From positions 124,001 through 188,000 of the forward strand of contig NIVC01001121.1 of NCBI GenBank assembly GCA_002269645.1: a stretch of 64,000 bases of DNA, given 5' to 3'. The notes under the pieces are model-generated. The model saw only the letters and a program-made list of their open reading frames with translations. It was not told the origin of the DNA and ran no database searches. A program made the position numbers and the translations under genes. This DNA comes from Macrostomum lignano (Eukaryota). This document shows positions 1,068 through 64,000 of the stretch, one piece after another (the stretch's first letter is position 1; each line of letters opens with the position of its first letter).

Positions 1068-28042
<26,975 letters not shown>

Positions 28043-38185: not shown

Positions 38186-40343
38186 ATTTATAATGGCTTT
38201 TGTCTCAATTAGGCTTATTTAAAATTAAACTTTGTACAATATATACATATCACTAGCTTAATAAGGAAAGAAGACAAAAAATGGGTAAGGCCTGACGCCT
38301 GACTAGGCCTATAAAAATTTAGATCAAACATTATTATATATTGTGAATATAAACAATATAATCTTAGATCACAGGATCCTTAGATTAGACCTAAAGCCTT
38401 GCCCCATTAGAATAAATTTCTTAAAGTCTATAGATAAAAGCCAAGCATCACCCATTTTATATACCAAATATACTAAGCATAATATATACTTTGTACACTA
38501 AATATCCTACAAAGAATTAGGAATATTGCATTAGGCCCATACCATAGGCATAGTCCGGATCATATTGGGTGCATACCTAAACAAAAATTGAATAATTACA
38601 AATGCATGCCAAAAAATTGAGTGCATGTCTATTCTTAAATCTCAAAACTATATTAGTGTTGCAACAATAAATGACATTTTTTTACATAATAACAATAAAA
38701 GATCTTTTTTAAATTAAATAATAGACTTTTTTGGCATAAAATTTGATGAAATTTTCTGCTTTTTTGGTGATATTATTTATAGTGGAAAATTTATACATGC
38801 AAAGATTTGTTTGAATGCATTTAAATGCAAATTAGTACTAAACCACACTCAGGAAAGTTACTATATGCCAGAATTTTCTGGCATACCATTGAAGAGTTGG
38901 GCTATTTTGGTGTACCACTTTGGTGTACCACTTTAAGCTTGAGAAATTTTTGGCATACCACTTTGAGCTTAAGAAACTTTTGAAACACCCATTGCAATAA
39001 TTTTTATTTTACAAAACTACGAGCTGTATATGCACATTTTAATGACAGCAGAAGTTTCAAAAAATTCCATTTTCATTTACAATACTAATGGTGCTTTCCA
39101 ATATAAAGTTTTAAAAACTTTTTTGTTTTTAAATTCATTAGTAATAATAGTTTTGCTTATTGTAAGATGTTATAGAAAAGTTTTTGTTTAATTAAAGAAC
39201 ATTTTTTGGAAAATTTAGAAAATGTAAGGTTTCTGAATGTGGTTTAACTTTATATGATAGATTTTTGCGATGTAAAAGTGGCATTGTTTGAAATCCATGT
39301 TGCAACAGCAAAAGGGTCCTTGAATTGTTGCAAAAGCTGCAAAAAAGGTCTTTCATTGTTGTAAGCGCAAATTGCAAAAAGGTCTTTTACTATTGCAACT
39401 GCAAAAAAGGTGGCGTACCTTTTTAATGAGAGGCATTTTTTTCTGGTGTACCATGCTGCACCATCCAAACTATGGGTACTAAATAGCTAATAAACAATAA
39501 ATTTAGTTTAAACAAATTGATTATCAAAAAACTTAAAAATAGTTCTAATATCTTAAGATCATAAGATAGCAATTCACAATCATGCATGTATTATCTCTAA
39601 ACTTATATTGACCATATGGTTTAGTTTTGCAACAAAAAATTAAAATAAGTCAATAGATAATCAAATTTTGTCACAAAATTATCTGAGTCATCAATTTGGC
39701 AACTTGTTCATAGTCTACTGCAATTGATTTGATAAGGCTTGCTAGCATGCATACGCGTATACTTGTATATACTCGTACGTACGCGCATACTTGTACATAT
39801 GCGCATGCATGCTTGCAATGAATTGTTAAAACTATAAATGCCAAAAAATATATAAAAAAATTTTTTTACATAAAATATCTTTATGAAAAGTATTGTCTGC
39901 AAAGTATAATTTATATTTTTACAATTCTCTTTCTGCCAATTACATATTGATCTTATAACTAGTAAAAGAACAGAATGATATAACATATTTGATTAAAAAT
40001 GTAGTGCATCTTGGTTGATATTTAACATTTTTTAAACCTTGCAATAAGGATATGAAAAACATAGCTTAAGTATTATAACAAACTAAAAAGTTGCATTGTA
40101 TCAAGTAGATTGAATAATTTTGTAACCACAATATACAAGTGTATACTGAATAATTAAAATGAATATTAATTTTCCATTGCTGCTGTCACGTGCAAGGCTA
40201 AAAAAACAAGCGCCTTCATTCTTAGTTCTTAGCAAGTTCACCTATAATCATCAAGCACATTTGCAGAATCCATTGTACTGTTACACTAGACGATTCCTTT
40301 TCTTGAAAAAGCTAAAAAATAGAGCCACTATTCTATAAAGATA

Positions 40344-45804: not shown

Positions 45805-47140
45805 ACTATAGTCATTGATCAATTCCTTATCTGTAACCATTGATAAGTCATTAATGAGTCATTGACTGTAGTCATTGATCAATTCTTTGTCTGTAACCAT
45901 TGATGAGTCATTGATGAGTCATTGACTGTAGTCATTGATCAATTCTTTGTCTGTAACCATTGATGAGTCATTGATCAGTCATTGACTGTAGTCATTGATC
46001 AATTCTTTGTCTGTAACCATTGATGAGTCATTGATGAGTCATTGACTGTAGTCATTGATCAATTCTTTGTCTGTAACCATTGATGAGTCATTGACTGTAG
46101 TCATTGATCAATTCTTTATCTGTAACCATTGATGAGTCATTAATGAGTCATTGACTGTAGTCATTGATCAATTCTTTATCTGTTACCATTGATGAGTCAT
46201 TGATGAGTCAGTGACTATAGTCATTGATCAATTCTTTATCTGTAACCATTGATGAGTCATTAATGAGTCATTGACTGTAGTCATTGACCAATTCTTTATC
46301 TGTTACCATTGATGAGTCATTGATGAGTCAGTGACTATAGTCATTGATCAATTCTTTATCTGTAACCATCGATGAGTCATTGATGAGTCATTAACTGTCG
46401 TCATTGATGAGTCATTGACTGTAGTCATTGATGAGTCATTGACTGTAGACATTGATGAGTCATTAACTGTAGACATTGATGAGTCATTGACTGTAGTCAT
46501 TGATGAGTCATTGACTGTAGTCATTGATGAGTCATTAACTGTAGTCATTGATGAGTCATTGACTGTAGTCATTGATGAGTCATTGACTGTAGTCATTGAT
46601 GAGTCATTGACTGTAGACATTGATGAGTCATTAACTGTAGACATTGATGAGTCATTGACTGTAGTCATTGATGAGTCATTGACTGTAGTCATTGATGAGT
46701 CATTAACTGTAGTCATTGATGAGTCATTGACTGTAGTCATTGATGAGTCATTGACTGTAGTCATTGATGAGTCATTGACTGTAGACATTGATGAGTCATT
46801 AACTGTAGACATTGATGAGTCATTGACTGTAGTCATTGATGAGTCATTGACTGTAGTCATTGATGAGTCATTAACTGTAGTCATTGATGAGTCATTAACT
46901 GTAGTCATTGATGAGTCATTGACTGTAGTCATTGATGAGTCATTGACTGTAGTCATTGACTGTAGTCATTGATGAGTCATGACTGTAGTCATTGATCAGT
47001 CATTGGCTGTAGTCATTGATGAGTCATTGACTGTAGTCATTAATGAGTCATTGACTGTAGTCATTGATGAGTCATCGAGTGTAGTCATTGATGAGAGTCA
47101 TTGACTGTAGTCATTGATGAGTCATTGATGAGTCATTGCC
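45805..47140. repeat. TGAGTCA-containing array: 48-60-bp units (45805-46370) followed by 24-bp GTAGTCATTGATGAGTCATTGACT units
   Basis: Directly visible, starting about 130 bp after the CNOT6 stop. Confidence 0.93.
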
Positions 47141-48009
47141 ATTTATTTAACTCGAGTTGTGCTGTTAATTACTGAACTAATTTAACGTGGCTGAACGATT
47201 TTTATTACACTGACTTTTTTATATCATGTTTCTCTTCTTAATCTTGTCTTTAACGAAAATAATTCTACCGTTGTTAACAGAAGCATCAAGAAACATTTCC
47301 TGATTGGAACTGCTTTATATTTTATTTTGTTTTAAATTTGTATTTGATATTTTAAACTAGTTATTTAGCTTTTCTCTTTTCGTGTTTTCCTGTTGTTTTT
47401 TGAAGTTTTTTTACTGCACTGGCTCTCTCTGCAGCAGCTATTTTTTGTGTTTTGATCTGCTTTTTTATCTGTTTGCGTGAACTCTTCTATTCTATCTTTG
47501 TGTGTGTATGTACTGTACATTGCTGTCTATTATTGTCAATGTAAATGTATGACTCATTTTTATTGAGGCTCTTTATTGCCTTACTGTACAGTAATCATGC
47601 AGTGTAGGCGTTACGTGTAAATTATCATATATATACAATAAGCATATACAACTGTAAAAATTTGTAACAAAACTTAATAAATTTGAATTTGTTTTCCAAA
47701 ACTGTCTCAGTGTCTCTACATTACTGTTAGTAGTATGTTATTAAAATTGTCTTTTGTCGTGTTGTTGTGCCTCCCTTTGTATCTCCTAATTGGCAATATC
47801 AGATTGCATATTTGATCCTTATTGTAGTTACCTGTACTGTACTGTGCTAACTGCTGTAAATCTCCGACATGCGACACATTCTTCAATAATTTGTATGTGT
47901 AATAAATCTGAAACTATTGACTATGTCGGCTAGCGTGAACAACACAGCACTATTTAATCCTCTAATCTGTTTCGTTTGGACTTTATCACTTTTATATCTG
48001 CATTTGTTG

Positions 48010-49370
48010 CTCTGGCAATGGGATTTCACTTTTGCTATGGAAATGGGATTTCACTGTTGCTATGGAAATGGGATTTCAGGGTTGCTATGGGAATTGGATT
48101 TCAGTGTTGTTATGGGAATTGGATTTCAGGGTTGCTATGGGAATGGGATTTCAGGGTTGCTATGGGAATGGAATTTCACTGTTGCTATGGAAATGGGATT
48201 TCAGTATTGCTATGGGAATTGGATTTCAGAGTTGCTATGGGAATGGGATTTCAGTGTTGCTATGGGAATGGGATTTAACTGTTGCTATGGGAATGGGATT
48301 TCAGTGTTGCTATGGGAATGGAATTTCACTGTTGCTATGGAAATGGGATTTCAGTATTGCTATGGGAATTGGATTTCAGAGTTGCTATGGGAATGGGATT
48401 TCAGTGTTGCTATGGGAATGGGATTTAACTGTTGCTATGGGAATGGGATTTCAGTGTTGCTATGGGAATGGGATTTCAGTGTTGCTATGGGAATGGGATT
48501 TTTCTGTTGCTATGGGAATGGGATTTCAGTGTTGCTATGGGAATGGGATTTCAGTGTTGCTATGGGAATGGGATTTCAGAGTTGCTATGGAAATGGGATT
48601 TCACTGTTGCTATGGGAATTGGATTTCAGGGTTGCTATGGAAATTGGATTTCACTGTTGCTATGGAAATGGGATTTCACTGTTGCTATGGAAATGGGATT
48701 TCACTGTTGCTATGGTGATAAAATTTTAATGTTGCTATAGGAATGGGATTTCAGTATTGCTATGGGAATTGGATTTCAGAGTTGCTATGGGAATGGGATT
48801 TCAGTGTTGCTATGGGAATGGGATTTCAGAGTTGCTATGGAAATGGGATTTCACTGTTGCTATGGGAATTGGATTTCAGGGTTGCTATGGGAATGGGATT
48901 TCACTGTTGCTATGGAAATGGGATTTCACTGTTGCTATGGTGATAAAATTTTAATGTTGCTATAGGAATGGGATTTCAGTATTGCTATGGGAATGGGATT
49001 TCAGAGTTGCTATGGGAATGGGATTTCAGTGTTGCTATGGGAATTGGATTTCAGAGTTGCTATGGGAATGGGATTTCAGTGTTGCTATGGGAATGGGATT
49101 TAACTGTTGCTATGGGAATTGGATTTCAGAGTTGCTATGGGAATGGGATTTCAGTGTTGCTATGGGAATTGGATTTCAGAGTTGCTATGGGAATGGGATT
49201 TCAGTGTTGCTATGGGAATGGGATTTTTCTGTTGCTATGGGCATGGGATTTTTCTGTTGCTATGGGCATGGGATTTTTCTGTTGCTATGGGCATGGGATT
49301 TTTCTGTTGCTATGGGCATGAGATTTTTCTGTTGCTATGGGAATGGGATTTCAGTGTTGCTATGGGGATA
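48010..49370. repeat. 25-bp minisatellite GTTGCTATGGGAATGGGATTTCAGT, about 54 copies
   Basis: Directly visible. Ends about 65 bp before the SLC25A51-like ATG. Confidence 0.95.
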
Positions 49371-49434
49371 GGGCTTCACAGTTGCCAACTGCATTGATTG
49401 AGAAAACGTTTCTGCAGCGAGACCGTGCAGGATC

Positions 49435-52065
49435 ATGCAGCAACAGCAGCAGCAACAGCAGGCTCTGTGGCCAAGGCCAGCTGTCTCAGTCAGCACTGCA
49501 GCTGTGCCAGCAGCCCCTCCGGCTGCTTCAGTGCTGACTGCCAGTCAGTGTTACATCTGCGGCGCCTTGTCAGCGGCCGCCAATGTCAGCGTCAGTTTCC
49601 CGTTGAATAAAATAGTGTTCAGACAGCAGCTTCATTATTGCAGATTCGCCTCGGCTGCTAAACAGGTCCTGGTGACCGAGTTTGGCACCTTGTATAGGTG
49701 AGTTGCGCTCTTGAATATTGTCTTTGCTATTGTCTAGCTATCAATGAGTCATCGCTTAGCTATCCATGAGTCACTGACTATCAATGAGTCATTACAGCTA
49801 TCAGTGACTCACTATCTCCAGTAATGAGTCATTACAGCTATCAATGACTCACTATCGCCAGTAATGAGTCATTACAGCTATCAATGACTCACTATCGCCA
49901 GTAATGAGTCATTACAGCTATCAATGACTCACTATAGCTAGCACTGAGTCATTACGAGCTATCAATGACTCACTATAGCTAGCAATGAGTCATTAGGAGC
50001 TATCAATGACTCACTATCGCTAGCAATGAGTCAGCCAGCTCAATGCTAGACATCTGCCTCTCTGCATTTCAGAGGCGCTCTGCCCCCTCTGCTCCAACGG
50101 GCCAGCAACCTGGGCATTATGTTCGGCTGTTACGCAATCGCTCGACAACACCTTGACAACAGTAGTTTATTACCAACGGTTGCTAAGAACGCCGCTGTTG
50201 CTAGGGCGGTAATGGCCGCTTCCGTTGCCGGAGCCTGCGAAGCCGCCTTAATGCCGTTCGAGCGAATTCAGACTCTGCTGCAGATGGGCAACGGTAGGCA
50301 CTCTACTGTCAGTAGTGCTTACGGACATCGCCGCGCCACTAATTTGTATCGGGATACGTTCCATGCCTTCTGCGAGCTTCGAAAACGCTATGGTGTACCG
50401 GAATTGTATCGTGGGCTCAGCGCTGTGAGTCTCGCTTTGTCTTGGAAATGACAGAAAGAATAGAAAAGATAGGGATAGAAAATCTCACCAAAGAGATTCT
50501 TTATAATGTCACTCATAGAGATTCTCCTGTAGAGCGATAGAGATTCCCCCACAGAGGGATAAAGATTCCCCTACAGAAGGATAGAGATTCCCCTACAGAG
50601 GGATAAAAATTCCCCTACAGAGGGATAGAAATTCCCCCACAGAGGGATAGAGATTCCCCCACAGAGAGATAAAGATTCCCTTACAGAGGGATAGAAATTC
50701 CCCCACAGAGAGATGGAGATTACTCTAAAGAGGGATAGAGATTCTCCTGTAGAGCGATAGAGATTCCCCCACAGAGGGATAGAGTTTCCCTTCAGAGGGA
50801 TAGATAGTCTCCTACAAAGGAATAGAGATTTCCCCACAGAGGGATAGAGATTCCTCTTATAGAGGGATAGAGATTCCCCTACAGAGGGATAGAGATTCCC
50901 CTACAAAAGGAAAGAGATTCCCCTACAGAGGGATAGAAATTCCCCTACAGAGGGATAGAGATTTCCTCACAGAGGGATAGAGATTCCTCTTATAGAGGGA
51001 TAGAGATTCCCCTACAGAGGGATAGAGATTCCCCTACAGAAGGAAAGAGATTCCCCTACAGAGGGATAGAAATTCCCCAGAGGGATAGAAATTCAGAGGG
51101 ATAGAGATTCCCCCACAGAGGGATAGAGATTCCCCTTATAGAGGTATAGAGATTCCCCTACAAAGGGATAGAGATTCTCCTACAGAGGGATAGAGATTCC
51201 CTAGCAGAGGGATAGAGATTCCCTAACAGAGGGATAGAGATTCCCTAACAGAGGGATAGAGATTCCCTAACAGAGGGATAGAGATTCCTCTAGAGATTCC
51301 CCAGAGGATAGAGATTCATAGTATAGATATTCCCCACAGGGATAGAGATTCCCCACATAGGGATAGAGATAACCCAACAAAGGGATAGAGATTCCCCACA
51401 TATGGATAGAGATAACCCACATAGGGATAGAGATTCCCCAACAAAGGGATAGAGATTCCCCTACAGAGGGATTGAGATTCTCCTACAAAGGGAGATTCCC
51501 CTACAGAGAGGGATAGAGATTCCTCTACAGAGGGATAGAGATTCTCATATATAGGATCATAGAGATGGCTTTAGATTTGAGATCTCTTGCCGTCAAGTTC
51601 TCAGACATTGACTATGCATATATTACTATGAGTTGCTATAGTAACGAAATCAACCACCAGGTCCTGCTGCGCAACTCCACCAGCACAGCTCTGTACTTTG
51701 GTCTGCGCGAGCAAACCCGGCATTGGCTGCCGCCAGCCGCAGATTCTTCAACTAGAAGCAGCAACGTCTGCGGCTTCGTCCAAGGCGCCTGCATCGGCGG
51801 CTTCGTGTCCACCCTGGTGTACCCGCTCAACGTGGCCAAATCGCATATGCAGGCCCGGGTTGGTGGCGGCTACCTCAGTCTGTCCGAGGTTCTGTCCGGC
51901 CTAGTGTCCGAGCGGAACGGCCGACTGACCGGGCTGATGCGCGGCTCTCCGGCCAACTGCTTCCGGGCAATGCTGTCCTGGGGTGTGGTGACCGCCGCCT
52001 ACGACTGGCTGGCTGACCGGCTTTTTGCTGCGTCCGCCTGCGGCTCCGTGCGACTGCGCGGATGA
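49435..52065 (+). CDS. SLC25A51: SLC25A51/MCART1-like mitochondrial carrier (NAD+ carrier family); exons 49435-49697, 50073-50424, 51661-52065
   Basis: YICGALSAAANVSVSFPLNKIVFRQQL, LYRGALPPLLQR, AGACEAALMPFERIQTLLQ, LYRGLSAVLLRN, VYPLNVAKSHMQARVGG, ANCFRAMLSWGVVTAAYDWL. Three carrier P-x-[DE] repeat equivalents, collinear with recalled SLC25A51. Confidence 0.9.
49740..50035. repeat. About 40-bp minisatellite GTAATGAGTCATTACAGCTATCAATGACTCACTATCGCCA (SLC25A51 intron 1)
   Basis: Directly visible, about 7 copies. Confidence 0.85.
50480..51550. repeat. 21-22-bp minisatellite ACAGAGGGATAGAGATTCCCC(C/T) (SLC25A51 intron 2)
   Basis: Directly visible. Confidence 0.92.
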
Positions 52066-52067
52066 GG

Positions 52068-52335
52068 GTTCTGGGATTTGGGAATAGACTGCTGGGATTT
52101 GGGAATAGACTGCTGGGATTTGGGAATAGACTGCTGGGATTTGGGAATAGACTGTTGGGATTTAGGAATAGACTGCTGGGATTTGGGAATAGACTGCTGG
52201 GATTTCGGAATAGACTGCTGGGATTTGGGAATAGACTGCTGGGATTTGGGAGTAGACTGTTGGGACTTGGGAATAGACTGCTGGGATTTGGGAATAGACT
52301 GCTGGGACTTGGGAATAGACTGCTGGGATTCGGTA
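52068..52335. repeat. 21-bp minisatellite GGGATTTGGGAATAGACTGCT, about 12 copies
   Basis: Begins directly after the SLC25A51 TGA stop. Confidence 0.92.
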
Positions 52336-52974
52336 ACAGACTGATGGGATATATATTTTTTCAAAGTTCTACGTATATATAGATTGATAGATTTTTTATA
52401 TCATAGTTGTGCGTTTTCAAATTCTAATTTACCATTACAGTAAAGAAGGTGCTACTTCCTGATTTCCGTTTACCTAATGCAGTACAGGCCGAAAATTCAA
52501 TTTTTAATCCGCCAAGCAATCCAGTTCTGCTTTATCCGCTCCGGTGTTTCTAATACGTGATTTTATAACTGATGTGTTTCTAATTATTGTACATTGCATT
52601 TTCGAATACAAGTATGTCCTAGTTCATTGTGATGGATGATATACCGGTCAATTCAATACTACATTAGGTTATTTTGGTGGATTCTAGTCTACTCAGAGTA
52701 GGTGCATAAGAAAATTGTCTTATTGTTATAGTACGCAAAATAGAAATAAAATTTTAGCCTTAACTAAAGAAACAATAAATTAATTGAAATAGACTTTTGG
52801 CATTTTAACGTTTCAATTTAATCAAAGGTACTCGAATACGTTCGTCTAATTAATGATTATTAAATAGTTAAAACACTGCAGGGTCTTCAAATTAAACGCC
52901 AGGATAGCAAACTCAGCATGCAACTTGATTAAAACAAATTTAGCATTGTGCAATTTATCAATTTAAACTCTCGT

Positions 52975-55773
52975 TCAGCTCAGTTCGCGACGAGATTTTC
53001 GGCACACCGTGGAGACAAGGACCTCGGCTTCGTTGTCCATGGCCAGCTTATCCTTGTCGCTCTGGCCGCTGCAATCGAGAAGCTCCTCGGCCGACTCCAC
53101 TGTGCCGTACACCACTCTTCTCGGATGGTTTAACTCAGGACTTCTACTCAGAGGACTCCACCGAGTTCGCTTGAATCTATGGCGAAGTCTTTGCATAATT
53201 GGAGTAGCAGCGCTTCCAGATGAGCGAGTCGCAAGCATAGTAATTGCGACACCTGCCATGATTCCTGCTAGGCAGCAGCAGAACACCACTAGGATCGGTG
53301 TTGAAATCCGCGTATCGGTGGATTCGGACGGTACACGAAATTCTGACGCCTGCAGTCCAGTTGCTTTCTGCACGCCGCTTCCAAAGAATCCCTTGAAGCT
53401 CCACGAGTTGCTGCTTATGTCGTAGCCCCACCGCCAGCCGTGCTTCTCAATGCGAGTTACCGGGCGCTCGATCAGTTCGTCGTCGGGCTCCTCGAACGGC
53501 GGACGTCGTACTGGCAGCCGGTGCAGACCGGAGCGGCCCTTCACGCACTGCATGACGGCACAGCCGTCCACCGTGTCCAGGGTGACCTGGCTGAAGCCCT
53601 CGGGGCATTGCTTTGGCCACTCGGACTCAGCAGAGAGACCACCCGACGAAGCCATCAGACCCCGACTTGGCTCGGCCAGCGGGTTTCCCGACCGACAAGA
53701 GAAGAATCCGCCGATCGGGAGTCGATATCTAGCGGCCGAGTGCAGGTCCATGCTCAGGCAGAGCGCGATGTCCCGTCCGATAACGTAGGGCTTGAAGAGC
53801 TCTCGGCAGGAGGCAGCCTGAGTGACTTGGTTCAAAAAGCGACCGTTAGTGGCATAGGCCCCGCCGAACACCATTCCCGAGTGGGTTCGGAGCCGAGCAC
53901 CTTTTCTCGCGGCGCACCAGAACGTATTGAGTGTAGTGGTCGATTTCTCACAATCGTAGCCGTCGTCGCAGGTGAAAAATATGTAGCAGTTTGTGGTTTT
54001 CTTGGTGCACTTTTCCTTGGTTTGACCAGTTGTTGTAAGAAGAGGCACCTGCTCGGTGGTTTTGAAGAGCAAGCAGGATTCTCATGATGAGCAGAGCTGC
54101 GATCTTATGCCTTTTACGGCAGTCTTTCATGCTAAGTTAATTGCATGTACATGCATGCTTTCATACTCTGTATCATAAGGAGCAGCTCACCTCTTCGTAG
54201 CCTTTGGGGCATGAAAACGTCCCACTTATTGGGTTTCTTAAAGCACCACCGTATGCGCTACAAGCACCCAACCAAGACCTGGTCTCTGTGCACGTCTGAT
54301 AGACGCCGGCAAAGCTGAAATTTGTCGCTGGTGCCTCGCAATGGCCGTCCAAGTTAGCGGTAGGGTCGAAATTGGCGGAATTCGGATCTTGACAGCCTTT
54401 GACTGCGTTGGCGGCGTAGTACCTTTTTGTGGTTACAAGTGGATAGAATAGGTCGCACTCGTAATACCGCTTTTGAACTATTGCTTCAAAAGGGTTCTAA
54501 GGGTTTCCATAGACGGATTGAAAATAGTTGGGCTCACCTAGTTACTGCATCCTCAATCTCCTTTCTGAGCTGCAGCAGGAACACCGCCGGCATCTCAGGT
54601 AGCGACCTTCGACTGATGACAGCGTACAGCGGCTCTCCGTCCACATCCACCCCTACGAGGTTTTCCTTGAGTCCTTTCAGCCAGTCTTCCAGACTCGGGT
54701 CTGCACCAAGAACTGGACCGCCATGCGACTTGATAGACATCTTGCTGATGCTCTTTTCGTACTTCTCGACGTTCTGCTTCGTAGCGATGTATTCAAATTT
54801 GGCTGACATGTTTAGCAGGCTGAAAAAGTTGAGACTCATTGTGGCCGACAGCTTGCTGTTTGTGAACTCCTGGCTGCTAAAGGCGTCCTTGTTAAAGAAG
54901 TCGACCTTTTCAAGAACGCCGCCCGCGTCAACCGTGGTGACCACATGCGTTCCGAAATCCCTGATCACCAGATCGGACAGGTATCGAGCCAGCTTGGTTC
55001 GGTTACTAGCGATGGCGCTCACGATGTCGGACATGCGGCTGACGAACGCCTCGGAGAGCCGGAAGTCCGGCTGCAGCTTGGCCGTGTAGAGCCTGTAGCG
55101 AAGCTGCGTCCGGCCCATCTTGAACTTGCTGCTAACGGCCACAGACTTCATCTGCTGGAACTCATCGGACAGCTTGCCGTTGATGCTGAGAACTTTGTTG
55201 GAGGCTTCGGCGTTGATTGACTGGCTGAGGGTGCTGGTGTAGTTATTGAAGTGCTCCATCACCTCAGACATGACTTCCACTGCGGACTCTTTGCGGATGA
55301 GTAGGTTCACTCTGTTTGGTAGGACGTACGCGCCGTCATCAGAGAGGGTGCAGTCGTTGAAGGAGATGTCCGCCACTTTCCCCATGTCCTTGTTTCTCAG
55401 GTTGTCCCAGCCGCCGCCTAATTAAATGTGGTTGTATTTTTACTGGATTTTTTAGCGGTAAAATTCATCGAAACATCTCAGTGGTATGCAAAGATGGAGA
55501 GGCGAGAGAGAGAGATGATATTTTGAAGTGCAGATACACTCGTATACACATGCAATTCAGTCCTATTTTTGTCAGCTTCTGAATAATAAGATACTTACCA
55601 GGAAGCGCAGAAAAGCGATTTAGGTTGCTCTTCTTGTCGACGAGCCATTTGCAAGCTGGTAGATTATTTTCATTGGCTTGATGATTTTTAACCTCGGTAA
55701 CCGAAGGTGGTGTTGCTTGAGCAGCGCAGACAATGGCTGCCGCCAATGCCACAGCGGCAATGCCTTGGAGCAT
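52975..55773 (-). CDS. MPEG1: Perforin-2/MPEG1 paralogue A; exons 55599-55773, 54538-55417, 54191-54422, 52975-54048
   Basis: Signal peptide; LPGGGWDNLRNKDMG; MACPF DFGTHVVTTVDAGG; EGF-like YYAANAVKGCQDPNSANFDPTAN; P2 FWCA...SGMVFGG, IGGFFSCRSGNPL, CPEGFSQ...DGCAVMQCVK; TM helix and cytosolic tail. Confidence 0.95.
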
Positions 55774-56096
55774 AGCGCTCGGTTCAGTTGCAACGCTCTC
55801 CTTGTTCCTTACTTGAACGGAGCAGGATTAGCAGGCAGCACACCGTAATCATATTTATATATTTATCTTGTTGACGGATATAAACTCTAATTAGCTTTGA
55901 AAATCTATTTAGAACCTTGACTATTTATTAATACCCCCGCACTTAGAAGCACAAGTGAGAGCAGTAAATTTGACTATAAATAATCTTCTAATTGTCTTGA
56001 AGCTTTATCTATAGCACCTTTGTATGTATATGTATATGTACATGTATATGTATATGTTGTATATGTATATATTGCCTACTATTGTCCCATATGCGC

Positions 56097-56245
56097 AGTG
56101 TATACTTCGCTACGCGCTGGGCGTGCACTACCCGGAGCGCCTGCCGTCCAACGCTCTGATGGCCCGCGCTGGAACTTCGCCCCTGAGCGCTACCCTGCGC
56201 TGGCGCCGCGGCGTGGCGGCCGACCGGTGCAGTATGTATATAGTA
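56097..56245 (+). mobile_element. 3' fragment of a non-LTR retrotransposon (LINE, RTE/L2/CR1-like ORF2 C-terminus)
   Basis: GC-rich island in AT-rich DNA. It translates CILRYALGVHYPERLPSNALMARAGTSPLSATLRWRR, resembling the recalled 'LRRILGIxWxDRxxNxELxxRAGxxPL...RRRL' motif downstream of the RT domain. Flanked by (TATG/TA)n. Confidence 0.6.
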
Positions 56246-56648
56246 TAATATATAGTATATCGTATTTTATACATTCGCTATTCTGGAGTCTATTATGTGT
56301 ATAATGCGCATCCTCCACAATACATTAAGGATCATGCAATAGGGTCATGGTCATGTAAGGTCTAGCAAATTCGCTGCATCTACTGCACCGCACATTCAAG
56401 TGTTTTTGTGCAGCACTCGCGGGTGTTTGTGTGTTGTTGTCCTTATTCAAAGGTAACAGTTTAACGGTGCCATCGTATATACGTACGTGTTCGGAAGAAG
56501 TAGTTCGTCTAAATAGTGCCGTTAGTTTTTGTTAAACCAGCTCTTGTTGTCTTATTTCTGTAGCGATATAAGTTTAAAAACTAGCTAGAACAGGCGCTGC
56601 GCTCCGCATCAGATCAAACTGAACTGATTTAAAATTTCGATCAGAAGA

Positions 56649-59600
56649 ATGCTGCTCCATTTTGGCCTTACTTTTTTTCTCCTTGCGCTTGTAATATCGG
56701 TTGTGTCATCAAAAGAACTGAAACTAGAGGCTCACCAAGCCGAAAATGGCCGACATTGGCGTCAGCTTGGAGGCTCGTCTGTCGGTTCTCCTCTGAGATT
56801 CTCTGCGCTGCCCGGTGCGTTAAAAATGAGAGGCCTACCGTACCGAGAGATCCTCTCGGATCTCGACCTAGATCTGTAGATTTTCCTTTTCTCTAACATA
56901 GACAATAATTGAGTTACTTTGCTTATTAAACTTTCGCATTTTGAATGGCTAGAAATCTCCAAATTCTCCATAAAATTTATCTTCTCTTTTATTCCTAAAA
57001 ACGGTAGTCATAGCCTTAAGTTGGGCCTCTCTAAAGTTTTGTTGGCTTCTCTAAAGTCCTAACTATCTTTGTAAACTTCCCTGTCTAGCCAAGTCTATAA
57101 ATAATCTCCTAGATATCTGCTTCTCTCATACATTTAGCCTCATTATTAGATTTACGCTCGAATGTTTTAGGAGGCGGTTGGGACAACCTCAGAAACTTGG
57201 AGATGGGACTTGTAGCTAGTGAGTCTTTTCAGCACGGCAAGCTGTCATCCGACGGAAAGTACTTGCTGCCAAGCGGCGTGATTCTGTATGTCAGAAAGGA
57301 GTCTAACTTGGAGATTCACTCGGAGATCATGGAGCACTGCAACAACTACACTGACTCGGTCAGCGGGTCAATCAATGCTGCCAGCACAGGATTCTTGAAG
57401 GCTATTGCTATCGCGGGTCGGCTGTCCGATGAGTACCAGCACGTTCGCTCGATTTCGCTTCGAGATAAACTTCAGATCGGCAGGACTCAGTTGCTCTATC
57501 GGACTTACTCAGCCAACATGCAGCCAGACTTTAAGCTGTCCGAATCGCTGATTGTTCGCTTGAAAGCGGTCGCAGGAGCGCTAGCAAAGAAGCGGACGAG
57601 CCTTGCCAGGTACAGGGCTGACCTGATTGTTCGCGACTATGGGACGCACGTTGTAACCTCGGTTGAAGCCGGCGGAATCCTGCAGAAGGTGGACTTCTTC
57701 CAGTCTGACTCGGTTGCAAACAGCAGCTCTCTGAGAAATAAGCTCTCAGCTTCATGAGCGCCCTTTTTCATTCGCTGCTCGGCGTAAGCATCGGCGCTGG
57801 ATCCGTGTCCAAAGAAGACCTGCAGGCGTACGAGAAGAGCGTCCGCGACACCATTGTCAAATCATATGGCGGGCCGAATCTGGGTCCGCAACCGAAGCTC
57901 TCCGATTGGCTGCGGACTTTGAATGAGAATCTGGTAGCGATTGATCGCAATGGCGAGCCGCTGTGCGATGTCATTAGCGAGGCCAACCTTCCCGGAGTCA
58001 ATGCGCTGCAACTGCTGGATCTGCGCAAGGCGATTCAGAGTGCCATCGAGAGGTTAGCTGTTGGATGTTGAATGTTGACAAAACTTTCTACGTATTCGTA
58101 GGACTGAATGTTGCTACAATATTAGAAAATACTACGTACGAGACTATAGTGTTTTTAACTTCTGATTATAATATATAAATAATAATAGTAGGAGGATCCC
58201 GGGCGCCTTGGCGCCACAACCAGCGATGAGGGAATTCCTCCCATTCCGCTGGCATACGGATAGCGAATACTGTACGCAGTCACGCACCTATATACACGCT
58301 CAGGTAGAGTGTACGGTGGCCCCTGCCTTTCTCATCGTCTGCATGTACACTCCTTGTACCATGGGGGGTTGGTCCTCGTGGGTGTGAATCGCACACAACC
58401 CCCTGGTCACTTTTTTGGTGCACAAGGAATTGAATCTGTTATCAAGGCGGGAGAGTCAGACGCTTTTACCGCTAAGCTGCTCTACCGATAACAGGGTGTT
58501 AAAATTAATATCTGAGTCGCATACTCGCGCTTAGAATAGTTCCTTACTTCACAGTAACATACATAACCCTGTCCCTGAATACGGCAGATACTACAAGGCT
58601 AACACCATCGTAGGCTGCATGGACCCCGGATCCAGCAGCTTCGATCCGCTGGCCAATTTTCCCGGAGACTGCGAGCACCAGGCCAAGAACTACAGCTTCG
58701 CTGGCGTCTACCAGATGTGCAACGACAACAACCCGGATGCCAAGTTCAATTTGTGCGCCGACAACTTCGACTCCGGTGCGGTGAAGAACCCAATTACTGG
58801 CCAGTTCAACTGTCCTTCGGAGTACGAATCTGTAAGTATTCTGCTGCGCCTCTGCGATTACTGAGCTTTAGCCCTGGGATATTTAATATTTTAAGCTTCT
58901 CTTAGTTCGCAGGTCTCAACGGAAGGGACTCACAACTTTTCTCGATCGCATTCTAGGTGTCACTGTTCAAAATCACTGGCAAGAAGAAAAGACGCTGCCA
59001 GAAGAAGACCAAACGTTGTTGGTTGATCTTCCATTGCAATGACGGCCAGGAGTGCGTCGAATCGACGTCAACCTTGGAGGCGTTCTGGTGTGCAGCCGAA
59101 CTAGAGGAGCAGCTGCCGGCTCATTCAGGCATGGTCTACGGTGGCGCGTATGCAGCCGATGGCAGGTTCGTTAACGAAATCACGAAGACAACCTCCTGCA
59201 GTGAATTCTTCAGGCCCTACCAAATAGGCCGGGACATTTTCCTGTGCCTCAGTCTCGACCTGGACTTGGCGAGCGAGCACCGCATTCCATTTGGCGGATT
59301 TTTCTCCTGCAGCGAAGGTAACCCTCTGGCCGAGCCCGGCCGAGAGCCTGTAGCTCTCGCTCGCAAAGCTGTCGCTAACGAAAACGACGAAGATTACCCG
59401 AAGCGCTGTCCCAAAGGCTTTAGCCAGGTCACGCTAGACACAATCGACGGCTGCGCGGTCTTGCAGTGCGTCAAGTCCAGACCAGACCCGGGCCGATTTC
59501 CGATCAGGCGCCCGCCATTTGAAGACGCCGAATTCGAGACGCTGGAGCCTTCGACTGAAACCGATCAAAGCGAGGCATCTCGGATGGCCTTGGGCGTCGT

Positions 59601-59919
59601 CGGAGGAGTCCTCGGCGCAGTCGGAGTCGGCGGCACGGCCGCTTATCTGGTCCGACGCCGAGGTGGCGACGGCAGCGGCGCTGGAGGAGTCGTCAGACGA
59701 GTGCGCAGCCAGCTCTCTCGCAGGTTCGGGAGCCGAGGAGCCGAGGTCCACCGTGGCCATGATGAGGATCCGGAACCTGGCTGCTCGAGCAGCGAGGAAC
59801 CGGATGAGGGCGATTGTCAGCCCTTGCTTCCACCTGGCGACGGCGCCAGCTGTGATGCTCCACCCGGCCAAGATGCCACCCTCCAGGTGCGATTGATGCA
59901 GGCAATCAGGCCGCGCTGA
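56649..59919 (+). CDS. MPEG1: Perforin-2/MPEG1 paralogue B, with apparent 1-nt frameshift at about 57754; exons 56649-56814, 57171-58052, 58588-58831, 58957-59919
   Basis: Same motifs as paralogue A (LPGGGWDNLRN, DYGTHVVTSVEAGG, RYYKANTIVGCMDP, FGGFFSCSEGNPL). The frame breaks at TCA-TGA where the paralogues read SA[ST]MS. Confidence 0.88.
58165..58486 (-). mobile_element. tRNA-derived SINE in intron 2 of MPEG1-B
   Basis: Minus strand starts GGTAGAGCAGCTTAGCGGTAAAAGCGTCTGACT (A-box-like), has GATTCAATTCC (B-box-like) about 55 nt in, then a unique body and a (TAT)n-like tail. This intron is 535 bp versus 115 and 127 bp in the paralogues. Confidence 0.6.
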
Positions 59920-60858
59920 GTGAGCAGTTGTACACGCACGATTTCGTAGCCTTCAGTGACGGCTGAACAAAGTTAATTAACAATTGTTTAAGCTTTACTG
60001 TTTGATTCAAATAATTACTAGAGACGTTTTCGAACGCAAAAAGTGAAATGTTGTAAAGCCCTTTTAATTAAACATTATCTGGGTGGGCTCAAGCATTACA
60101 AAGGTTATTGAGCTATTATTTCCTATACATGTAACATAATAATATAGCGACGTAACTTTTTAACGGAAAATTTCTTTAACTGCAAAAAATTACCCTTATT
60201 ATCATTAAAATAGAAAGTTTCATCATCCAAGAGTTTCCGTGATGTAAGCCTGTTCACAATACTCGTATATTTCGTTTGCCTTGTTCCGTGTTTTTCGCAT
60301 TAGTGAACTCGCAGTTTAAACAGAACTTCGAAGCTGCTAATTCTGGGTACAAGAAATCTAAAAATAAACTTGACGCACTGCTCAGAATTACGCGAGTATT
60401 TGGGTAAGAAAGCCATTAACAGGCATCTAGCTACTGCACAGCCTTGCTCTGTATTGCTGTTTTGGACAGACATCACATGACAAACTGCAATGGGGTACAA
60501 TAGGTCTAGCACTGCGTTAGACAAAAATCTGTTCGACTGTCCCTTCTGTCCATTGCTCTCTTCTCTTCTGTACCACACGGTTTGAGTAAGCTCTAGCAAG
60601 CAGATGTACAGTAATTGCCCACCTATTACCGATCCTTCACTGGCATAGCGAAGAAGAGAAGGGCTGCCGCTATTGCCATTGTTGTCAGGGACGCTAGTTT
60701 AGTAAGAAAATAAATCTGAAAAGACAAAAAGCTATATTAGCCAACTATACTAACTATATTATCACTGTCGCCAAAGCCGAGACCCTTGGCACTTTCATAT
60801 AAATTTGATAGAAACAAACCTTAAAACTTAGCAGCATCAGAATACGACATCTCGTAAA

Positions 60859-63155
60859 ATGTGTCACTGTCTGTGGGTGATTCTAGCCCTCATTGGCCTG
60901 TGCTGCTCTGCTGGGGCCACTCCGGTCGTGAACCTCAGCCAGAGCTCTCCCGCCCCAGACGGCAGCAACCGCTGCTTATGGCTGCTCAACAGCGGAGCGT
61001 CAATCACGCGATTCTCCTCGATGCCAGGTGAGATGAGACTAAATGAGATTTACAACTGACTTCGTTTAGGCCAAACACGGAAAGTATACCTTTTTTAAAC
61101 TATACAGGTGGAGGCTGGGACAACCTGAGAAACAAGGACATGGGTCTCGTGGCTGACCTGTCGTTTACAGACTGCACCCTATCAGATGACGGCATGTACG
61201 TTCTCCCGAAGAATGTGATTCTGTACCCCAGGAAGGAGTCCAACGTGGAGGTCATGTCCCAGGTGATGGAGCACTTCAATAACTTTACTAGCTCCGTCAG
61301 CGCCTCAGTGAATATCGGTGCGAACGGAATTCTGGGCGCCATCGGAATCGGTGGCAAACTGTCAGAAGAGTTCCAGATGGTCAAGAGTGTGGCAGTGCAG
61401 AACAGACTGCAGATTGGCAGGTCGCAGCTCCGCTACCGAATGTACTCGTCGAAGCTTCAGCCAGACTTTAAGCTGTCCGTGGCGCTCACCAATCGCTTGA
61501 CGGACATTGTGAGTGCGCTGGTGAACAATCGAACGAAGCTGGCTCGATACCTGTCTGATCTAATCGTTAGGGACTTTGGAACGCACGTTATCACTTCTGT
61601 AGAAGCCGGTGGTATTTTGGAAAAGTTGGACTTCTTCAGGTCCGACTCCATCACGGACAGGAACTTCATGGAGAACAAGTTTTCTGCGTCGATGAGTGTA
61701 AAATTTCATCAAATTCTCGGAGTCGATGTCGGCGGCAGTACCACCGTAACAAAAGAGGACATCGATAAGTACACAAAGAGCGTTCGCAAAATGATGATGC
61801 GCTCATTCGGCGGACCAATCCTGGGTCCCAGCCCGAAGCTGGCAGATTGGATGAAGTCTCTGCACGAGAATCTGGTGCCGATCGATCGCGAGGGCGAGCC
61901 GCTGTACAGCGTGATCAGCAGGCGCTCCCTGCCGAACCTGCCCATGACGCATCTGATGCAGCTGAGGAAGGAGATCGAGGATGCCGTGATGCGGTAGGCC
62001 ATTCCCTTTCCAACCAGTTTTTTTATTAGGAAAAGTTTCTGGTGCCCTTGCCTCAGCATATTGCCTGCTATTGTGGGTTAGATGTCTCAGATGGTTCGAT
62101 GGCTCATACCCGTATTCCAGCTACTACAAGGCCAACACCGTCAAGGGCTGCATGGATCCCAATTCGCAAAACTTTGACCCCATCGCCAACGTCGGCGGCC
62201 AGTGCGAGGCTCCCGCCTCCAACTTCAGCTTCGCTGGCGTCTATCAGCAGTGCCGGGAGTCGAACCCCGGGGCGGGCATGAAGCTGTGCTCCGGGGACGG
62301 CAACGGCATTCTGCCAAACCCCATCACAGGAAAATTGACTTGCCCAGCTGGATACGAGCCGGTAGGTTGTTGAATTTTTCCCCTGCCTTATCGACTGAAA
62401 ATAGAAAAAAATACTTTGGGTAACAGCTGTCTAAAAATCTTGCTGTTCTAGATCCAGCTGCTGTCCACCATTGGCCGTACGGGAAAACGCTGCTGGGAGA
62501 AGACGCGTCGGTGCTGGTTGGTCTTCACCTGCAATGACGGGGTCGAATGCGCCGACTCGCATACTGTCGTGACTGCCTACTGGTGTGCGGCTCGTCGAGG
62601 TGCGAAGCTCAACCAAAACTCCGGCATGGTGTACGCAGGCGCCTACGCTGCTGACGGACGATTCGTGAACGAAATCACGCAGGGTAAATCCTGTCCGGAG
62701 TACTTTCGGCCCTACAAGATAGGACGCGACATCTACCTCTGCCTGAGCCTAGATCTGGATGCGGCTTCCCGCTACCGCATCCCTTTCGCCGGATTCTTCG
62801 CCTGCAACTCAGGCAACCCGCTGTCGGAGATGAACAGACGCCTCGTGGCTTACTCCAGCTCTGGCAACGGCGCCAAGTCAACCTCGCCGAAACGCTGTCC
62901 GGACAGCTTCAGCCAGGTGACTCTGGACACGATCGATGGCTGCGCAATCATGCAGTGCGTGAAGGGCCGCTCTGGGCTCAGCCGTCTGCACATCAGGCGT
63001 CCGCCTTTTGAGGAGCCGGACTATGAGCTCATCGAGCACCCCGTGACCCGCATTGAAAGCCACGGCTGGCGCTGGGCCTACAATGCTACAAAGAACATTT
63101 GGCGTTTTCTTGGCTTCTACGGCAGCAGCTCTGAGGAAGTCGGCTCTAGCAGTGT

Positions 63156-63198
<43 letters not shown>

Positions 63199-63585
63199 CA
63201 AGCGACGCCCAACAGCCGCGACTCGGGTTCCGACACGTCAACGGCCATCCTGGCCATCGTGAGCTGCCTGGCAGCCATCGCTGCGATTGGCCTCATCGTA
63301 CTGCTGGTTCGCAAGCGCGCCTCGCCCGGCCCCAGAATTCGTCGGGTTCTCCGCGACCTGCGCAGCCGCCGTCGTCAAGGCCGACAGCAGTCGTCGGCGC
63401 CCTACCGAGAAGTGCCTCCGCCGGACGAAAGCACGCAGCCACTGACTGAGGACGGCCAGGTGAACAATTCGTACGGTTCGCTGGAGGCCGACGAGGTCAG
63501 CTGCGACGACGAAGACGACGAGGTTGTCATGGACGACGAGCTGGCCTCAAGTGTGCTCCGCAGGAGCAACGGCGCCTCCGTTTGA
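60859..63585 (+). CDS. MPEG1: Perforin-2/MPEG1 paralogue C; exons 60859-61027, 61108-61993, 62121-62361, 62452-63585
   Basis: Signal peptide; MPGGGWDNLRNKDMG; DFGTHVITSVEAGG; RYYKANTVKGCMDPNSQNFDP; YWCAA; FAGFFACNSGNPL; poly-Ser linker; TM AILAIVSCLAAIAAIGLIVLLV; acidic tail. All phases are consistent. Confidence 0.95.
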
Positions 63586-64000
63586 GCTGTGAAATGAGCC
63601 GCGGTGTCAAGAAGCACAGGTAGTAAAATGACGTAACACTTGCTGTGACGCAACATTTGCTGTAACAGCCCCATTTCGTCTCAAATTTTACCAAGATAAG
63701 ATTAAAATTAAGTGTAGACGTGTGATGACAAAAAACAGACTTTGTTTTCTTTCATTATTCATTTGCAATTTTAAACTTTTATTTGAAGTGGTCACTTACT
63801 CTTACTCGGAATCTATTTTTTAAATCGAGACTATTTTTTAAACAAAAAGCGCTGTTTGGTTTTTTTAATTTTTTTGTTTAACTATTTTGCAAGATTAGTT
63901 CATCAAATAGTTAACTAGTACTCAAGTTTAAGATCATGAAACATCCAGCTGTACAATACACTGGTTTTGTTATAAATCTATACAAGTATGTAAATTTGAC

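What the first reader, a model, noticed from the sequence alone, without database searches (positions are those of the whole stretch)
52975..63585. Tandem cluster of three diverged perforin-2/MPEG1 pore-forming genes
Seen: three full-architecture paralogues (signal, MACPF, EGF-like, P2, linker, TM, tail), oriented -, +, +. A and C share the GRSGL.RL..RRPPFEEPD.ELIE.PVTRIE.HGWRW segment that B lacks, although B lies between them. Established: MPEG1 is a bactericidal phagolysosomal pore former, single-copy in mammals and expanded in some fish and invertebrates. Inference: a locally diversified innate-immune effector array generated by duplication plus inversion. Hetero-oligomeric or target-specialised pores are possible.
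Basis: partly seen in the sequence, partly recalled or inferred. Interest (0 to 1): 0.7.

Follow-up and report, generated by a model that had tools for sequence, protein, structure and literature searches.

The report
Three perforin-2 genes in a flatworm
The region holds three old, neighbouring copies of the pore-forming immune gene MPEG1/perforin-2 in the flatworm Macrostomum lignano. They are already annotated and counted in a published survey, so the cluster is ordinary, except that the middle copy has lost a small "locking" segment found in nearly all other perforin-2 proteins.

Summary
Window 52975-63585 carries three four-exon MPEG1/perforin-2 genes: A (-), B (+) and C (+). The window is Macrostomum lignano assembly Mlig_3_7, contig NIVC01001121.1. 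GenBank already annotates A (786 aa) and C (809 aa) exactly as I modelled them. A 2023 survey reports 13 MPEG1 genes in this species.

The paralogues are ancient: 55-63% amino-acid identity, synonymous sites saturated. They are not haplotigs. The whole cluster, however, occurs three times in the assembly at 98-99% identity, matching the species' three subgenomes.

- **B's frame is broken here.** One base is missing in the MACPF exon at 57753/57754, so GenBank annotates only the 501-aa downstream ORF. The other two copies are intact at that site, but each has its own single-base homopolymer loss elsewhere. B's ectodomain shows dN/dS 0.12 between copies. Long-read consensus error is the likelier cause.
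- **The segment B lacks is ancestral.** It is the conserved C-terminal tail (CTT, also called the L-domain) that locks neighbouring subunits in mammalian perforin-2. B lost it, along with an N-terminal cysteine pair, a glycosylation site and the YxxΦ tail motifs.

Function is inferred by homology only. Interest is low to moderate.

The parts
52975..55773 (-). Gene A, MPEG1/perforin-2 paralogue, 786 aa. Exons 55773-55599, 55417-54538, 54422-54191 and 54048-52975 (stop included).
   Evidence: Gene model. It has the same length and span as the GenBank gene in L003 and is near-identical to P0005, BOX15_Mlig010268g2. Pfam MACPF E = 2.8e-21.
56649..59919 (+). Gene B, a derived MPEG1 paralogue lacking the CTT. 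Exons 56649-56814, 57171-58052, 58588-58831 and 58957-59919. The frame is broken in exon 2 in this assembly copy.
   Evidence: The downstream 501-aa ORF (57754-59919) equals P0121, BOX15_Mlig012544g1. MACPF hits occur on both halves. Other copies are P0009 and P0008.
57753..57757 (+). Site of the single-base loss in B exon 2 (a two-base run shortened to one) and the resulting in-frame TGA at 57755-57757.
   Evidence: Alignments. L001 and L002 are intact at this site.
60859..63585 (+). Gene C, canonical MPEG1/perforin-2 paralogue, 809 aa. Exons 60859-61027, 61108-61993, 62121-62361 and 62452-63585.
   Evidence: GenBank gene of 809 aa with the same span. PDB phmmer E = 2e-111. AF2 model plus Foldseek to 6u2k/6sb3.
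61572..61613 (+). MACPF signature (DFGTHVITSVEAGG) in C. Equivalents: A 54959-54918 (-) and B 57635-57676 (+).
   Evidence: G-T-H and G are invariant columns in the 54-sequence alignment.
62455..62574 (+). P2/MABP extended beta-hairpin of C (res 434-473). Equivalents: A 54045-53926 (-) and B 58960-59079 (+). K+R count is 6 in C, 5 in A and 10 in B.
   Evidence: Long strands 430-454 and 457-479 in the C model and 363-386 and 390-412 in the B model.
63013..63123 (+). CTT/L-domain core of C (res 620-656, EPDYELIE...HGWRW...RFLGFYG). The A equivalent is 53490-53380 (-).
   Evidence: Predicted strands 630-633, 638-643 and 648-654 at pLDDT about 62-73. The domain is defined in PMC6989145 and PMC6753088.
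59524..59652 (+). B short acidic juxtamembrane linker (59524-59583, 20 aa) running directly into the Gly-rich TM segment (59584-59652). This is where the CTT strands and helix are missing.
   Evidence: The B model has no strands between residue 537 and the TM helix 571-600. The same sequence occurs in P0009 and P0121.
55774..56648 (.). An 875-bp divergent intergenic region between the start codons of A and B (head-to-head).
   Evidence: Coordinates. No function was tested.

Best explanation
The region is a three-gene tandem/inverted cluster of ancient MPEG1/perforin-2 paralogues in the free-living flatworm Macrostomum lignano (Mlig_3_7 contig NIVC01001121.1). It sits between a mitochondrial-carrier gene and a Kelch/BACK gene.

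Each gene has four exons and encodes a type I membrane protein with a signal peptide, MACPF domain, EGF-like module, P2/MABP domain with a long basic beta-hairpin, a single TM segment and a cytoplasmic tail.

By homology with mammalian perforin-2 (inferred, not shown here), the proteins would follow this route:
1. Tail motifs sort them to endo/phagolysosomes.
2. They assemble into ring pre-pores on the vesicle membrane through the TM anchor and the P2 hairpin.
3. On acidification they flip and insert a beta-barrel pore into engulfed cells.

A and C are canonical. B is the oldest and most derived branch of the three. Compared with A and C, B has:
- lost the beta-strand/helix part of the C-terminal tail (CTT/L-domain), which in mouse and human perforin-2 locks onto the neighbouring subunit's hairpin;
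- lost an N-terminal cysteine pair;
- lost a conserved N-glycosylation sequon;
- a much more cationic hairpin;
- no YxxPhi tail motifs, but a [DE]xxxL[LI]-like motif instead.

The single-base frame break in B in this window is most likely an unpolished long-read homopolymer error in a triplicated genome, not a dead gene. The whole cluster is present three times in the assembly as the three subgenome copies.
For: **Identity and source**
- The best hits are M. lignano proteins.
- P0121 is exactly the window ORF, and the contig context and gene sizes match.

**Family membership**
- Pfam MACPF hits.
- PDB MPEG1 at E = 2e-111 over 572 residues, and the P2 domain alone at E = 4e-39.
- AF2 model of C (pLDDT 71.6) against MPEG1 pre-pores: E = 1e-51, TMt up to 0.81.
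- 48 invariant columns are shared with 53 other MPEG1s.

**Age and order of the paralogues**
- NJ tree: Macrostomum clade 100%, then P0007, then B, then (A, C-group) at 75%.
- pS is 0.6-0.75 between paralogues.

**Triplication**
- L001 and L002 hold the same cluster at 98-99% identity.
- About 85% of this genome exists in three copies, with 1.1% CDS divergence (PMC10733133).

**B is under constraint**
- Ectodomain dN/dS is 0.12 between copies, p = 2e-4 against neutrality.

**The frame break looks like an assembly error**
- All six exon single-base indels among the three copies are private losses from 2-4 nt homopolymers.
- The L001 and L002 B coding sequences differ by 1 substitution but 2 such indels.
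- The assembly is Canu on PacBio reads, polished with Pilon (PMC5730564).
- 93% of read pairs multi-map.

**B's derived features**
-.

**CTT function**
- PMC6989145 and PMC6753088.
Against: - No expression, localisation or activity data for these genes were found. The only indirect support is that the GenBank annotation is built from a transcriptome.
- The frame break in B cannot be checked without reads. All three assembled B copies carry some frameshift, whereas A carries none (outside a contig end) and C carries one. That also fits recent decay of B, although the excess is not significant (about p = 0.14 by my own binomial estimate counts).
- A+C-group monophyly has only 75% bootstrap support.
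- The sorting-motif readings are pattern matches only.
- CTT strands in the C model have only moderate confidence (pLDDT 62-73).
Confidence: 0.8

Rival explanations
1. B is a genuine pseudogene in this subgenome copy, and perhaps in all three. After the recent whole-genome duplication the redundant, already degenerate B paralogue is being lost, and the single-base deletions are real mutations.
For: - Each of the three assembled B copies has a different frameshift: window exon 2, L001 exon 1, L002 exon 4.
- B has about 9 private departures from positions that are at least 90% conserved in other MPEG1s, against 2 each for A and C.
- B lacks the CTT and a disulfide pair.
- Its tail evolves near neutrally, with w = 0.8.
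Against: - Ectodomain w is 0.12 between copies.
- No other stop or frameshift occurs in 2.2 kb of the window copy.
- L001 and L002 differ by 1 substitution but 2 indels, an implausible ratio for real mutations.
- Every indel is a homopolymer shortening, typical of PacBio consensus error.
- The two lost cysteines disappeared as a pair, which is how functional proteins lose a disulfide.
Confidence: 0.2
2. The cluster mainly serves feeding and intracellular digestion rather than antibacterial immunity. On this reading the proteins lyse ingested diatoms, prey or yolk cells in the pharynx or in gut phagocytes, and the paralogues are specialised for different cargo or compartments.
For: - In the planarian Schmidtea mediterranea, MPEG1-like-1 and MPEG1-like-2 are reported solely in the temporary embryonic pharynx (PMC5293490).
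- Flatworm digestion is largely phagocytic (general knowledge).
- Tail motifs differ between paralogues: YxxPhi in A and C, an acidic di-leucine-like motif in B.
Against: - No expression data exist for the Macrostomum genes.
- In molluscs, fish and mammals, MPEG1 responds to pathogens and recombinant fragments are antibacterial (PMC10781884).
- The two roles are not mutually exclusive.
Confidence: 0.3
3. The three copies are assembly artefacts: haplotigs or collapsed or expanded repeats of a single gene.
For: The assembly is known to be redundant. The whole cluster does recur on three contigs at 98-99% identity.
Against: - A, B and C share only 55-63% amino-acid identity, with saturated synonymous sites.
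- They differ in orientation, intron sequences and tails.
- The same A-B-C order recurs on independent contigs, although L002 begins inside A.
Confidence: 0.02

Closest known systems
Mammalian MPEG1/perforin-2 (PDB 6sb3, 6u23, 6u2k; PMC6989145, PMC6753088)
   Same: The domain order is the same: signal peptide, MACPF, EGF-like, P2/MABP with a long basic hairpin, CTT/L-domain, TM and tail. A and C align end to end at 32-37% identity. The MACPF signature and most cysteines are conserved.
   Different: - These are three linked four-exon genes. From my own knowledge, untested here, the mammalian gene is a single intronless copy.
- The tails are about 106-113 aa (TM plus tail). The tail alone is about 40 aa in the typical MPEG1 (PMC10781884).
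- C has a long Ser-rich spacer before the TM segment.
- B lacks the CTT strands and helix, the N-terminal Cys pair and one N-glycan sequon.
Invertebrate MPEG1 expansions (PMC10781884, which reports 13 MPEG1 in M. lignano; mollusc and oyster MPEG1 families)
   Same: Lineage-specific multiplication of full-length MPEG1 genes in an invertebrate. These very genes were counted in that survey.
   Different: The survey gives a count only. It does not describe the tandem/inverted layout or the CTT-less paralogue. Nor does it note that much of the count comes from three near-identical subgenome copies: 3 genes x 3 contigs, plus a dispersed C-like copy.
Engineered mouse perforin-2 lacking the CTT (delta 606-652; PMC6989145), and perforin-1 as a proposed CTT-less descendant
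   Same: B naturally lacks roughly the stretch removed in that construct. It keeps the P2 hairpin that confers binding to acidic lipids.
   Different: B is still TM-anchored and belongs to the Macrostomum MPEG1 clade, so it is not a perforin-1 relative. Its activity is unknown. The mouse truncation was tested only for lipid binding, which was unaffected.

Membership tests
MPEG1/perforin-2 | N-terminal MACPF domain with the (Y/W)-G-(T/S)-H-(F/Y)-x6-G-G signature and two TMH helix bundles | tested here: met
   - Pfam PF01823 E = 2.8e-21 for A, 5.2e-22 for C, and 9e-09 plus 9e-06 for the two halves of B.
- The motif reads DFGTHVVTTVDAGG, DYGTHVVTSVEAGG and DFGTHVITSVEAGG.
- Helical TMH regions appear in the models.
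MPEG1/perforin-2 | P2/MABP beta-prism domain with an extended basic beta-hairpin, unique to MPEG1 | tested here: met
   - phmmer to the isolated mouse P2 domain 6sb1: E = 4e-39.
- Foldseek to 6sb4 and 6sb1: TMt 0.77-0.80.
- Long hairpin strands occur in both the C and B models.
- Hairpin K+R counts are 5, 10 and 6 for A, B and C.
MPEG1/perforin-2 | [quoted passage not shown] | tested here: met
   The alignment to 6sb3 is continuous through residues 353-430. The conserved motifs are C362, C380, C396, C408 and C426 (invariant) and YY..N..GC (Y353, Y354, N357, G361).
MPEG1/perforin-2 | C-terminal tail (CTT/L-domain): two strands plus a helix before the TM segment, pairing with the neighbour's hairpin | tested here: inconclusive
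   - A and C carry the conserved Trp (98% of 49 outgroup MPEG1s). C has predicted strands at 630-654, but only at pLDDT 62-73.
- B does not meet this feature. It has only 20 residues between RRPPFE and the TM segment, and no strands.
- Intersubunit pairing itself cannot be tested here.
MPEG1/perforin-2 | Type I topology: signal peptide, single C-terminal TM segment, cytoplasmic tail | tested here: met
   Kyte-Doolittle peaks at the N-terminus and at A 674-705, C 691-723 and B_C 395-417. TM helices appear in the models. No dedicated signal-peptide predictor was available.
MPEG1/perforin-2 | Acid-triggered oligomeric pore formation and killing of engulfed microbes | not testable with these tools
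   Known for the mouse and human proteins. No data exist for Macrostomum.
MPEG1/perforin-2 | Expression in phagocytic cells and induction by microbes | not tested
   No paper mentions these locus names. The only evidence is that the annotation is derived from a transcriptome.

The most novel reading that the evidence does not exclude
B is a functional, selectively maintained perforin-2 that has naturally shed the CTT "interdomain lock" and gained a hyper-cationic membrane-binding hairpin and a different sorting motif. It would then assemble or fire differently from canonical perforin-2. It might form pores without the acid-dependent unlocking step, work in a different compartment, or cap or modulate A/C rings. 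That would be an independent natural replay of the CTT loss proposed to have led from MPEG1 to perforin-1.
Probability: 0.2. Interest if true: 0.5.

Novelty: already known. Interest (0 to 1): 0.25.

Why it matters
As a cluster it adds little. Invertebrate MPEG1 expansions are well documented, and these genes are already in GenBank, UniProt and a published count.

Three modest points are useful:
- The published figure of 13 MPEG1 genes in M. lignano is largely the same few loci counted once per subgenome. The number of distinct paralogues is nearer five or six. This is my inference from the protein types and loci seen, not a direct count.
- B is a naturally CTT-less, still membrane-anchored perforin-2 in a transgenesis- and RNAi-capable model animal. 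It could serve as a ready-made test of what the CTT lock does in vivo.
- The frame breaks illustrate how unpolished homopolymer errors in this triplicated assembly can mimic pseudogenes.

Tried and rejected
- **Other MACPF copies in the window.** tblastn found none outside 52975-63585.
- **Repeats that might have mediated the duplication or inversion.** Only coding-sequence homology between paralogues was found, at 71-76%.
- **dN/dS by domain between A, B and C.** Synonymous sites are saturated (pS 0.6-0.75, several dS undefined), so the values cannot be used. I used the subgenome copies instead.
- **Literature on the loci.** A search for the locus names found nothing. A search for Macrostomum immunity or MPEG1 found only the copy-number mention.
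- **B orthologues in other species.** A search with P0009 returned only M. lignano proteins and one C-group transcript, so the age of the CTT loss is not dated.
- **Ancestral exon-4 acceptor in A.** It would be out of frame. The in-frame acceptor 33 nt downstream (exon 4 starts at 54048) matches the GenBank protein.
- **Haplotig explanation for A, B and C.** Rejected on divergence.
- **Handling of B.** It was analysed as two separate pieces, or through the database proteins of other copies. I did not restore its frame.
Full report
**What is in the sequence**

The mechanical ORF list and three-frame translations of 52900-64000 show three sets of long open exons. Their MACPF exons hit Pfam PF01823 with E = 2.8e-21 (A), 5.2e-22 (C), and 9e-09 plus 9e-06 (the two halves of B). 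I placed splice sites by GT-AG and by frame. The three genes share one structure:
- exon 1: signal peptide to ...LPG, phase 1;
- exon 2: GGWDNLRN through the whole MACPF domain, phase 2;
- exon 3: EGF-like module, phase 0;
- exon 4: P2/MABP domain, juxtamembrane region, TM segment and tail.

The models are:

| Gene | Strand | Exons | Protein |
|---|---|---|---|
| A | - | 55773-55599, 55417-54538, 54422-54191, 54048-52975 | 786 aa |
| B | + | 56649-56814, 57171-58052, 58588-58831, 58957-59919 | frame broken (see below) |
| C | + | 60859-61027, 61108-61993, 62121-62361, 62452-63585 | 809 aa |

tblastn with all pieces finds no other MACPF sequence in the 64-kb window.

**The frame break in B**

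The MACPF exon is one open frame in A and C. In B it is split. One base is missing relative to A and C at 57753/57754, and TGA follows at 57755-57757 after residue 250. The rest of the gene, 501 codons from the ATG at 57754, is open in the other frame. I analysed B as two pieces, or through database proteins from other genomic copies, and did not restore the frame.

**Where the window comes from**

A protein search with C returned Macrostomum lignano proteins at the top, followed by mollusc, echinoderm, nemertean and vertebrate MPEG1 at 31-38% identity.
- P0005 (786 aa) is near-identical to my A model and uses the same exon-4 acceptor.
- P0121 (BOX15_Mlig012544g1, 501 aa) is exactly the window's B ORF downstream of the break.

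P0121 lies on contig NIVC01001121.1 (303,806 bp) of assembly GCA_002269645.1 (Mlig_3_7). The gene order there is Mito_carr, 786 aa (-), 501 aa (+), 809 aa (+), Kelch/BACK. The window is therefore about bases 124001-188000 of that contig, and my A and C models coincide with GenBank's.

The locus is thus already annotated, as hypothetical or MACPF domain-containing proteins. A 2023 survey of MPEG1 across Metazoa states that M. lignano has 13 MPEG1 genes and cites it as an example of intensive duplication in invertebrates (PMC10781884). It does not describe the layout or any loss of the C-terminal tail.

**Three copies of the whole cluster**

Two further contigs carry the same arrangement:
- L001 (NIVC01002244.1): A, B and C between Mito_carr and Kelch.
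- L002 (NIVC01000833.1): the contig starts inside A, followed by B, C and Kelch.

They are 98.1-98.3% identical to the window and 98.8% identical to each other. This fits the report that about 85% of the DV1 genome exists in three paralogous copies, with 2.2% SNP divergence overall and 1.1% in coding sequence (PMC10733133). A, B and C themselves are not haplotigs, but nine of the 13 counted genes are probably this cluster counted three times. A fourth, dispersed C-like gene (P0001) sits on NIVC01000118.1. It is a DNA-level copy of window 60114-64000, introns included, at 95-97% identity and among different neighbours.

**Is B dead?**

Aligning the three copies shows six single-base indels in exons. 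Each is private to one copy and each is the loss of one base from a 2-4 nt homopolymer:

| Copy | Gene and exon | Window-equivalent position |
|---|---|---|
| Window | B exon 2 | 57753 |
| L001 | B exon 1 | 56740 |
| L002 | B exon 4 | 59477 |
| L002 | C exon 2 | 61205 |
| L002 | A exon 2 (two, at the contig's first bases) | 55380 and 55406 |

The L001 and L002 B coding sequences differ by one substitution but two such indels. That ratio is not what real mutation gives. It is what residual PacBio error gives in a Canu assembly polished with Pilon (PMC5730564), in a genome where 93% of read pairs multi-map.

Nei-Gojobori counts between the window and L001 copies:

| Gene or region | dN/dS | Notes |
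|---|---|---|
| B overall | 0.29 | |
| B ectodomain | 0.12 | 4 non-synonymous against 10 synonymous changes; p = 2e-4 against neutrality |
| B TM plus tail | 0.8 | |
| C | 0.07-0.09 | range over the three copy pairs |
| A | 0.35 | |

B has therefore been under purifying selection since the subgenomes diverged. I put about 75-80% on assembly error and about 20% on a real, very recent lesion. All three B copies carry a frameshift, which is suggestive, but the excess over A and C is not significant (about p = 0.14, my binomial estimate counts).

**Family membership**

phmmer of C against PDB sequences gives E = 2e-111 to mouse and human MPEG1 over residues 52-623, and E = 4e-39 to the isolated P2 domain. 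An AlphaFold2 model of C built on a 54-sequence alignment has mean pLDDT 71.6. Its ectodomain is mostly above 80, the long P2 hairpin forms strands 430-454 and 457-479, and the TM helix is 694-721. The model matches MPEG1 pre-pore structures 6u2k, 6u2l, 6u23 and 6sb3 at E = 1e-51 to 3.5e-48 with TMt 0.75-0.79, and up to 0.81 for the liposome-bound 6u2w. Perforin-1 and complement proteins follow far behind. A, B and C share all 48 invariant columns of the alignment, including the G-T-H...G MACPF signature and most cysteines.

**How the three relate**

A neighbour-joining tree on 519 gap-free columns, with 500 bootstraps, puts all Macrostomum sequences in one clade (100%). P0007 branches first, then B, then A together with the C group (C, P0004, P0003) at 75% support. 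Amino-acid identities are A-C 63%, B-C 59% and A-B 55%.

Between paralogues the proportion of synonymous differences is 0.6-0.75, which is saturated, so domain-wise dN/dS is not meaningful. Amino-acid identity is:
- 53-65% in the MACPF, EGF-like and P2 domains;
- 46-49% in the CTT and linker;
- 26-31% in the N-terminus, TM segment and tail.

The duplications are therefore old. The head-to-head A/B pair, with 875 bp between start codons, plus tandem B/C requires at least one inversion. No non-coding remnant of the events survives.

**The segment that B lacks**

It consists of two strands and a helix just before the TM segment. These pack against the P2 hairpin of the neighbouring subunit, forming an intermolecular four-stranded sheet that has been proposed as an interdomain lock (PMC6989145; PMC6753088).

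Its Trp is conserved in 98% of 49 non-Macrostomum MPEG1s, and in A (W636) and C (W640). C has predicted strands at 630-633, 638-643 and 648-654, at moderate confidence.

B keeps the threading part up to RRPPFE. A 20-residue acidic linker then runs straight into a Gly-rich TM segment, compared with 65 residues in A and 77 in C. The model of the intact database copy of B (P0009, pLDDT 75.5) has no strands between residue 537 and the TM helix 571-600. All three genomic copies of B share this state, so it is real. That A and C share the segment across B is simply retention of the ancestral state.

B roughly equals the mouse delta 606-652 construct, which still bound lipids. Ni et al. also suggested that CTT loss accompanied the origin of perforin-1.

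**Other derived features of B**
- Of 134 columns at least 90% conserved in non-Macrostomum MPEG1s, B departs privately at about nine, against two each for A and C.
- These departures include both members of an N-terminal cysteine pair (C39 and C79 in C numbering) and the Asn of a conserved N-x-T sequon.
- The P2 hairpin has 10 Lys+Arg in B, against 5 in A and 6 in C.
- A and C tails carry YxxPhi-type motifs (YGTV in A; YREV and YGSL in C). B has no tail tyrosine but carries DCQPLL, which fits [DE]xxxL[LI]. This is a pattern match only.

**Likely mechanism**

This is inferred from the mammalian structures, not shown here:
1. The proteins are made as type I membrane proteins and sorted to endo/phagolysosomes.
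2. They form ring pre-pores held to the vesicle membrane by the TM segment and the P2 hairpin.
3. On acidification they reorient and insert a beta-barrel into the engulfed target.

B, without the lock and with a more cationic hairpin, may assemble or trigger differently.

Whether the targets are bacteria or food is open. Planarian MPEG1-like genes are reported only in the temporary embryonic pharynx (PMC5293490). No expression data were found for the Macrostomum genes, beyond the fact that the GenBank annotation is transcriptome-based.

**Verdict**

This is a real, correctly recognised MPEG1 cluster that is already annotated and already counted in the literature. The CTT-less paralogue B is the only element with some novelty.

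Noticed in passing
window 46007-47138, 48005-49366, 49736-50033, 50515-51544, 52071-52350: Dense minisatellite arrays with 20-25 nt units and up to about 54 copies lie in and around the mitochondrial-carrier gene just upstream of the cluster. The 21-nt array at 52071-52350 matches at many more shifted positions in L001, which suggests a longer array there. It also creates the spurious SIPKSQQ-repeat ORFs.
   Followed up: partly
window 53154 (A exon 4, cytoplasmic tail) vs L001 5922-5957: L001 has a 36-nt in-frame insertion relative to the window, yet the GenBank protein for the L001 gene is still 786 aa. The annotators' transcript evidence apparently skips it.
   Followed up: partly
window 63158 (C exon 4): The (AGC)n poly-serine tract in the spacer before C's TM segment differs by 12 nt between subgenome copies.
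   Followed up: no
L007 (NIVC01000118.1) 8875-12987 vs window 60114-64000: This is a fourth, dispersed C-like gene (P0001, 727 aa). It was copied at DNA level with introns and flanks at 95-97% identity. A gap of about 86 nt in the tail region truncates the tail, and the gene sits next to a RING/B-box gene rather than in the cluster.
   Followed up: partly
L004-L006 (Logan SRR28338163-5): Intron-free contigs from three sequencing runs encode P0003 (764 aa as called, starting at MPGGGWDN). It is a C-group MPEG1, 72-77% identical to C, with a CTT and a Ser-rich spacer. The species of origin is unknown to me.
   Followed up: no
P0010 and P0006 (UniRef models from the older ML2 assembly): P0010 joins the C-terminal half of one MPEG1 to the N-terminal part of the next, which suggests another tandem MPEG1 pair elsewhere in the genome. 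P0006 is a frameshift-ridden fusion of B and C.
   Followed up: no
window 2219-7631 (-), 33744-34748 (+), 42730-44264 (+), about 49400-52100 (+): The other genes in the window look like housekeeping genes: an ABCA-like transporter, a glycosyltransferase, an LRR plus endonuclease/exonuclease/phosphatase (CCR4-like) gene, and a mitochondrial carrier.
   Followed up: partly
window 36001-40000: GC content drops to 0.29-0.33, against about 0.48 elsewhere in the window. I did not examine this region.
   Followed up: no
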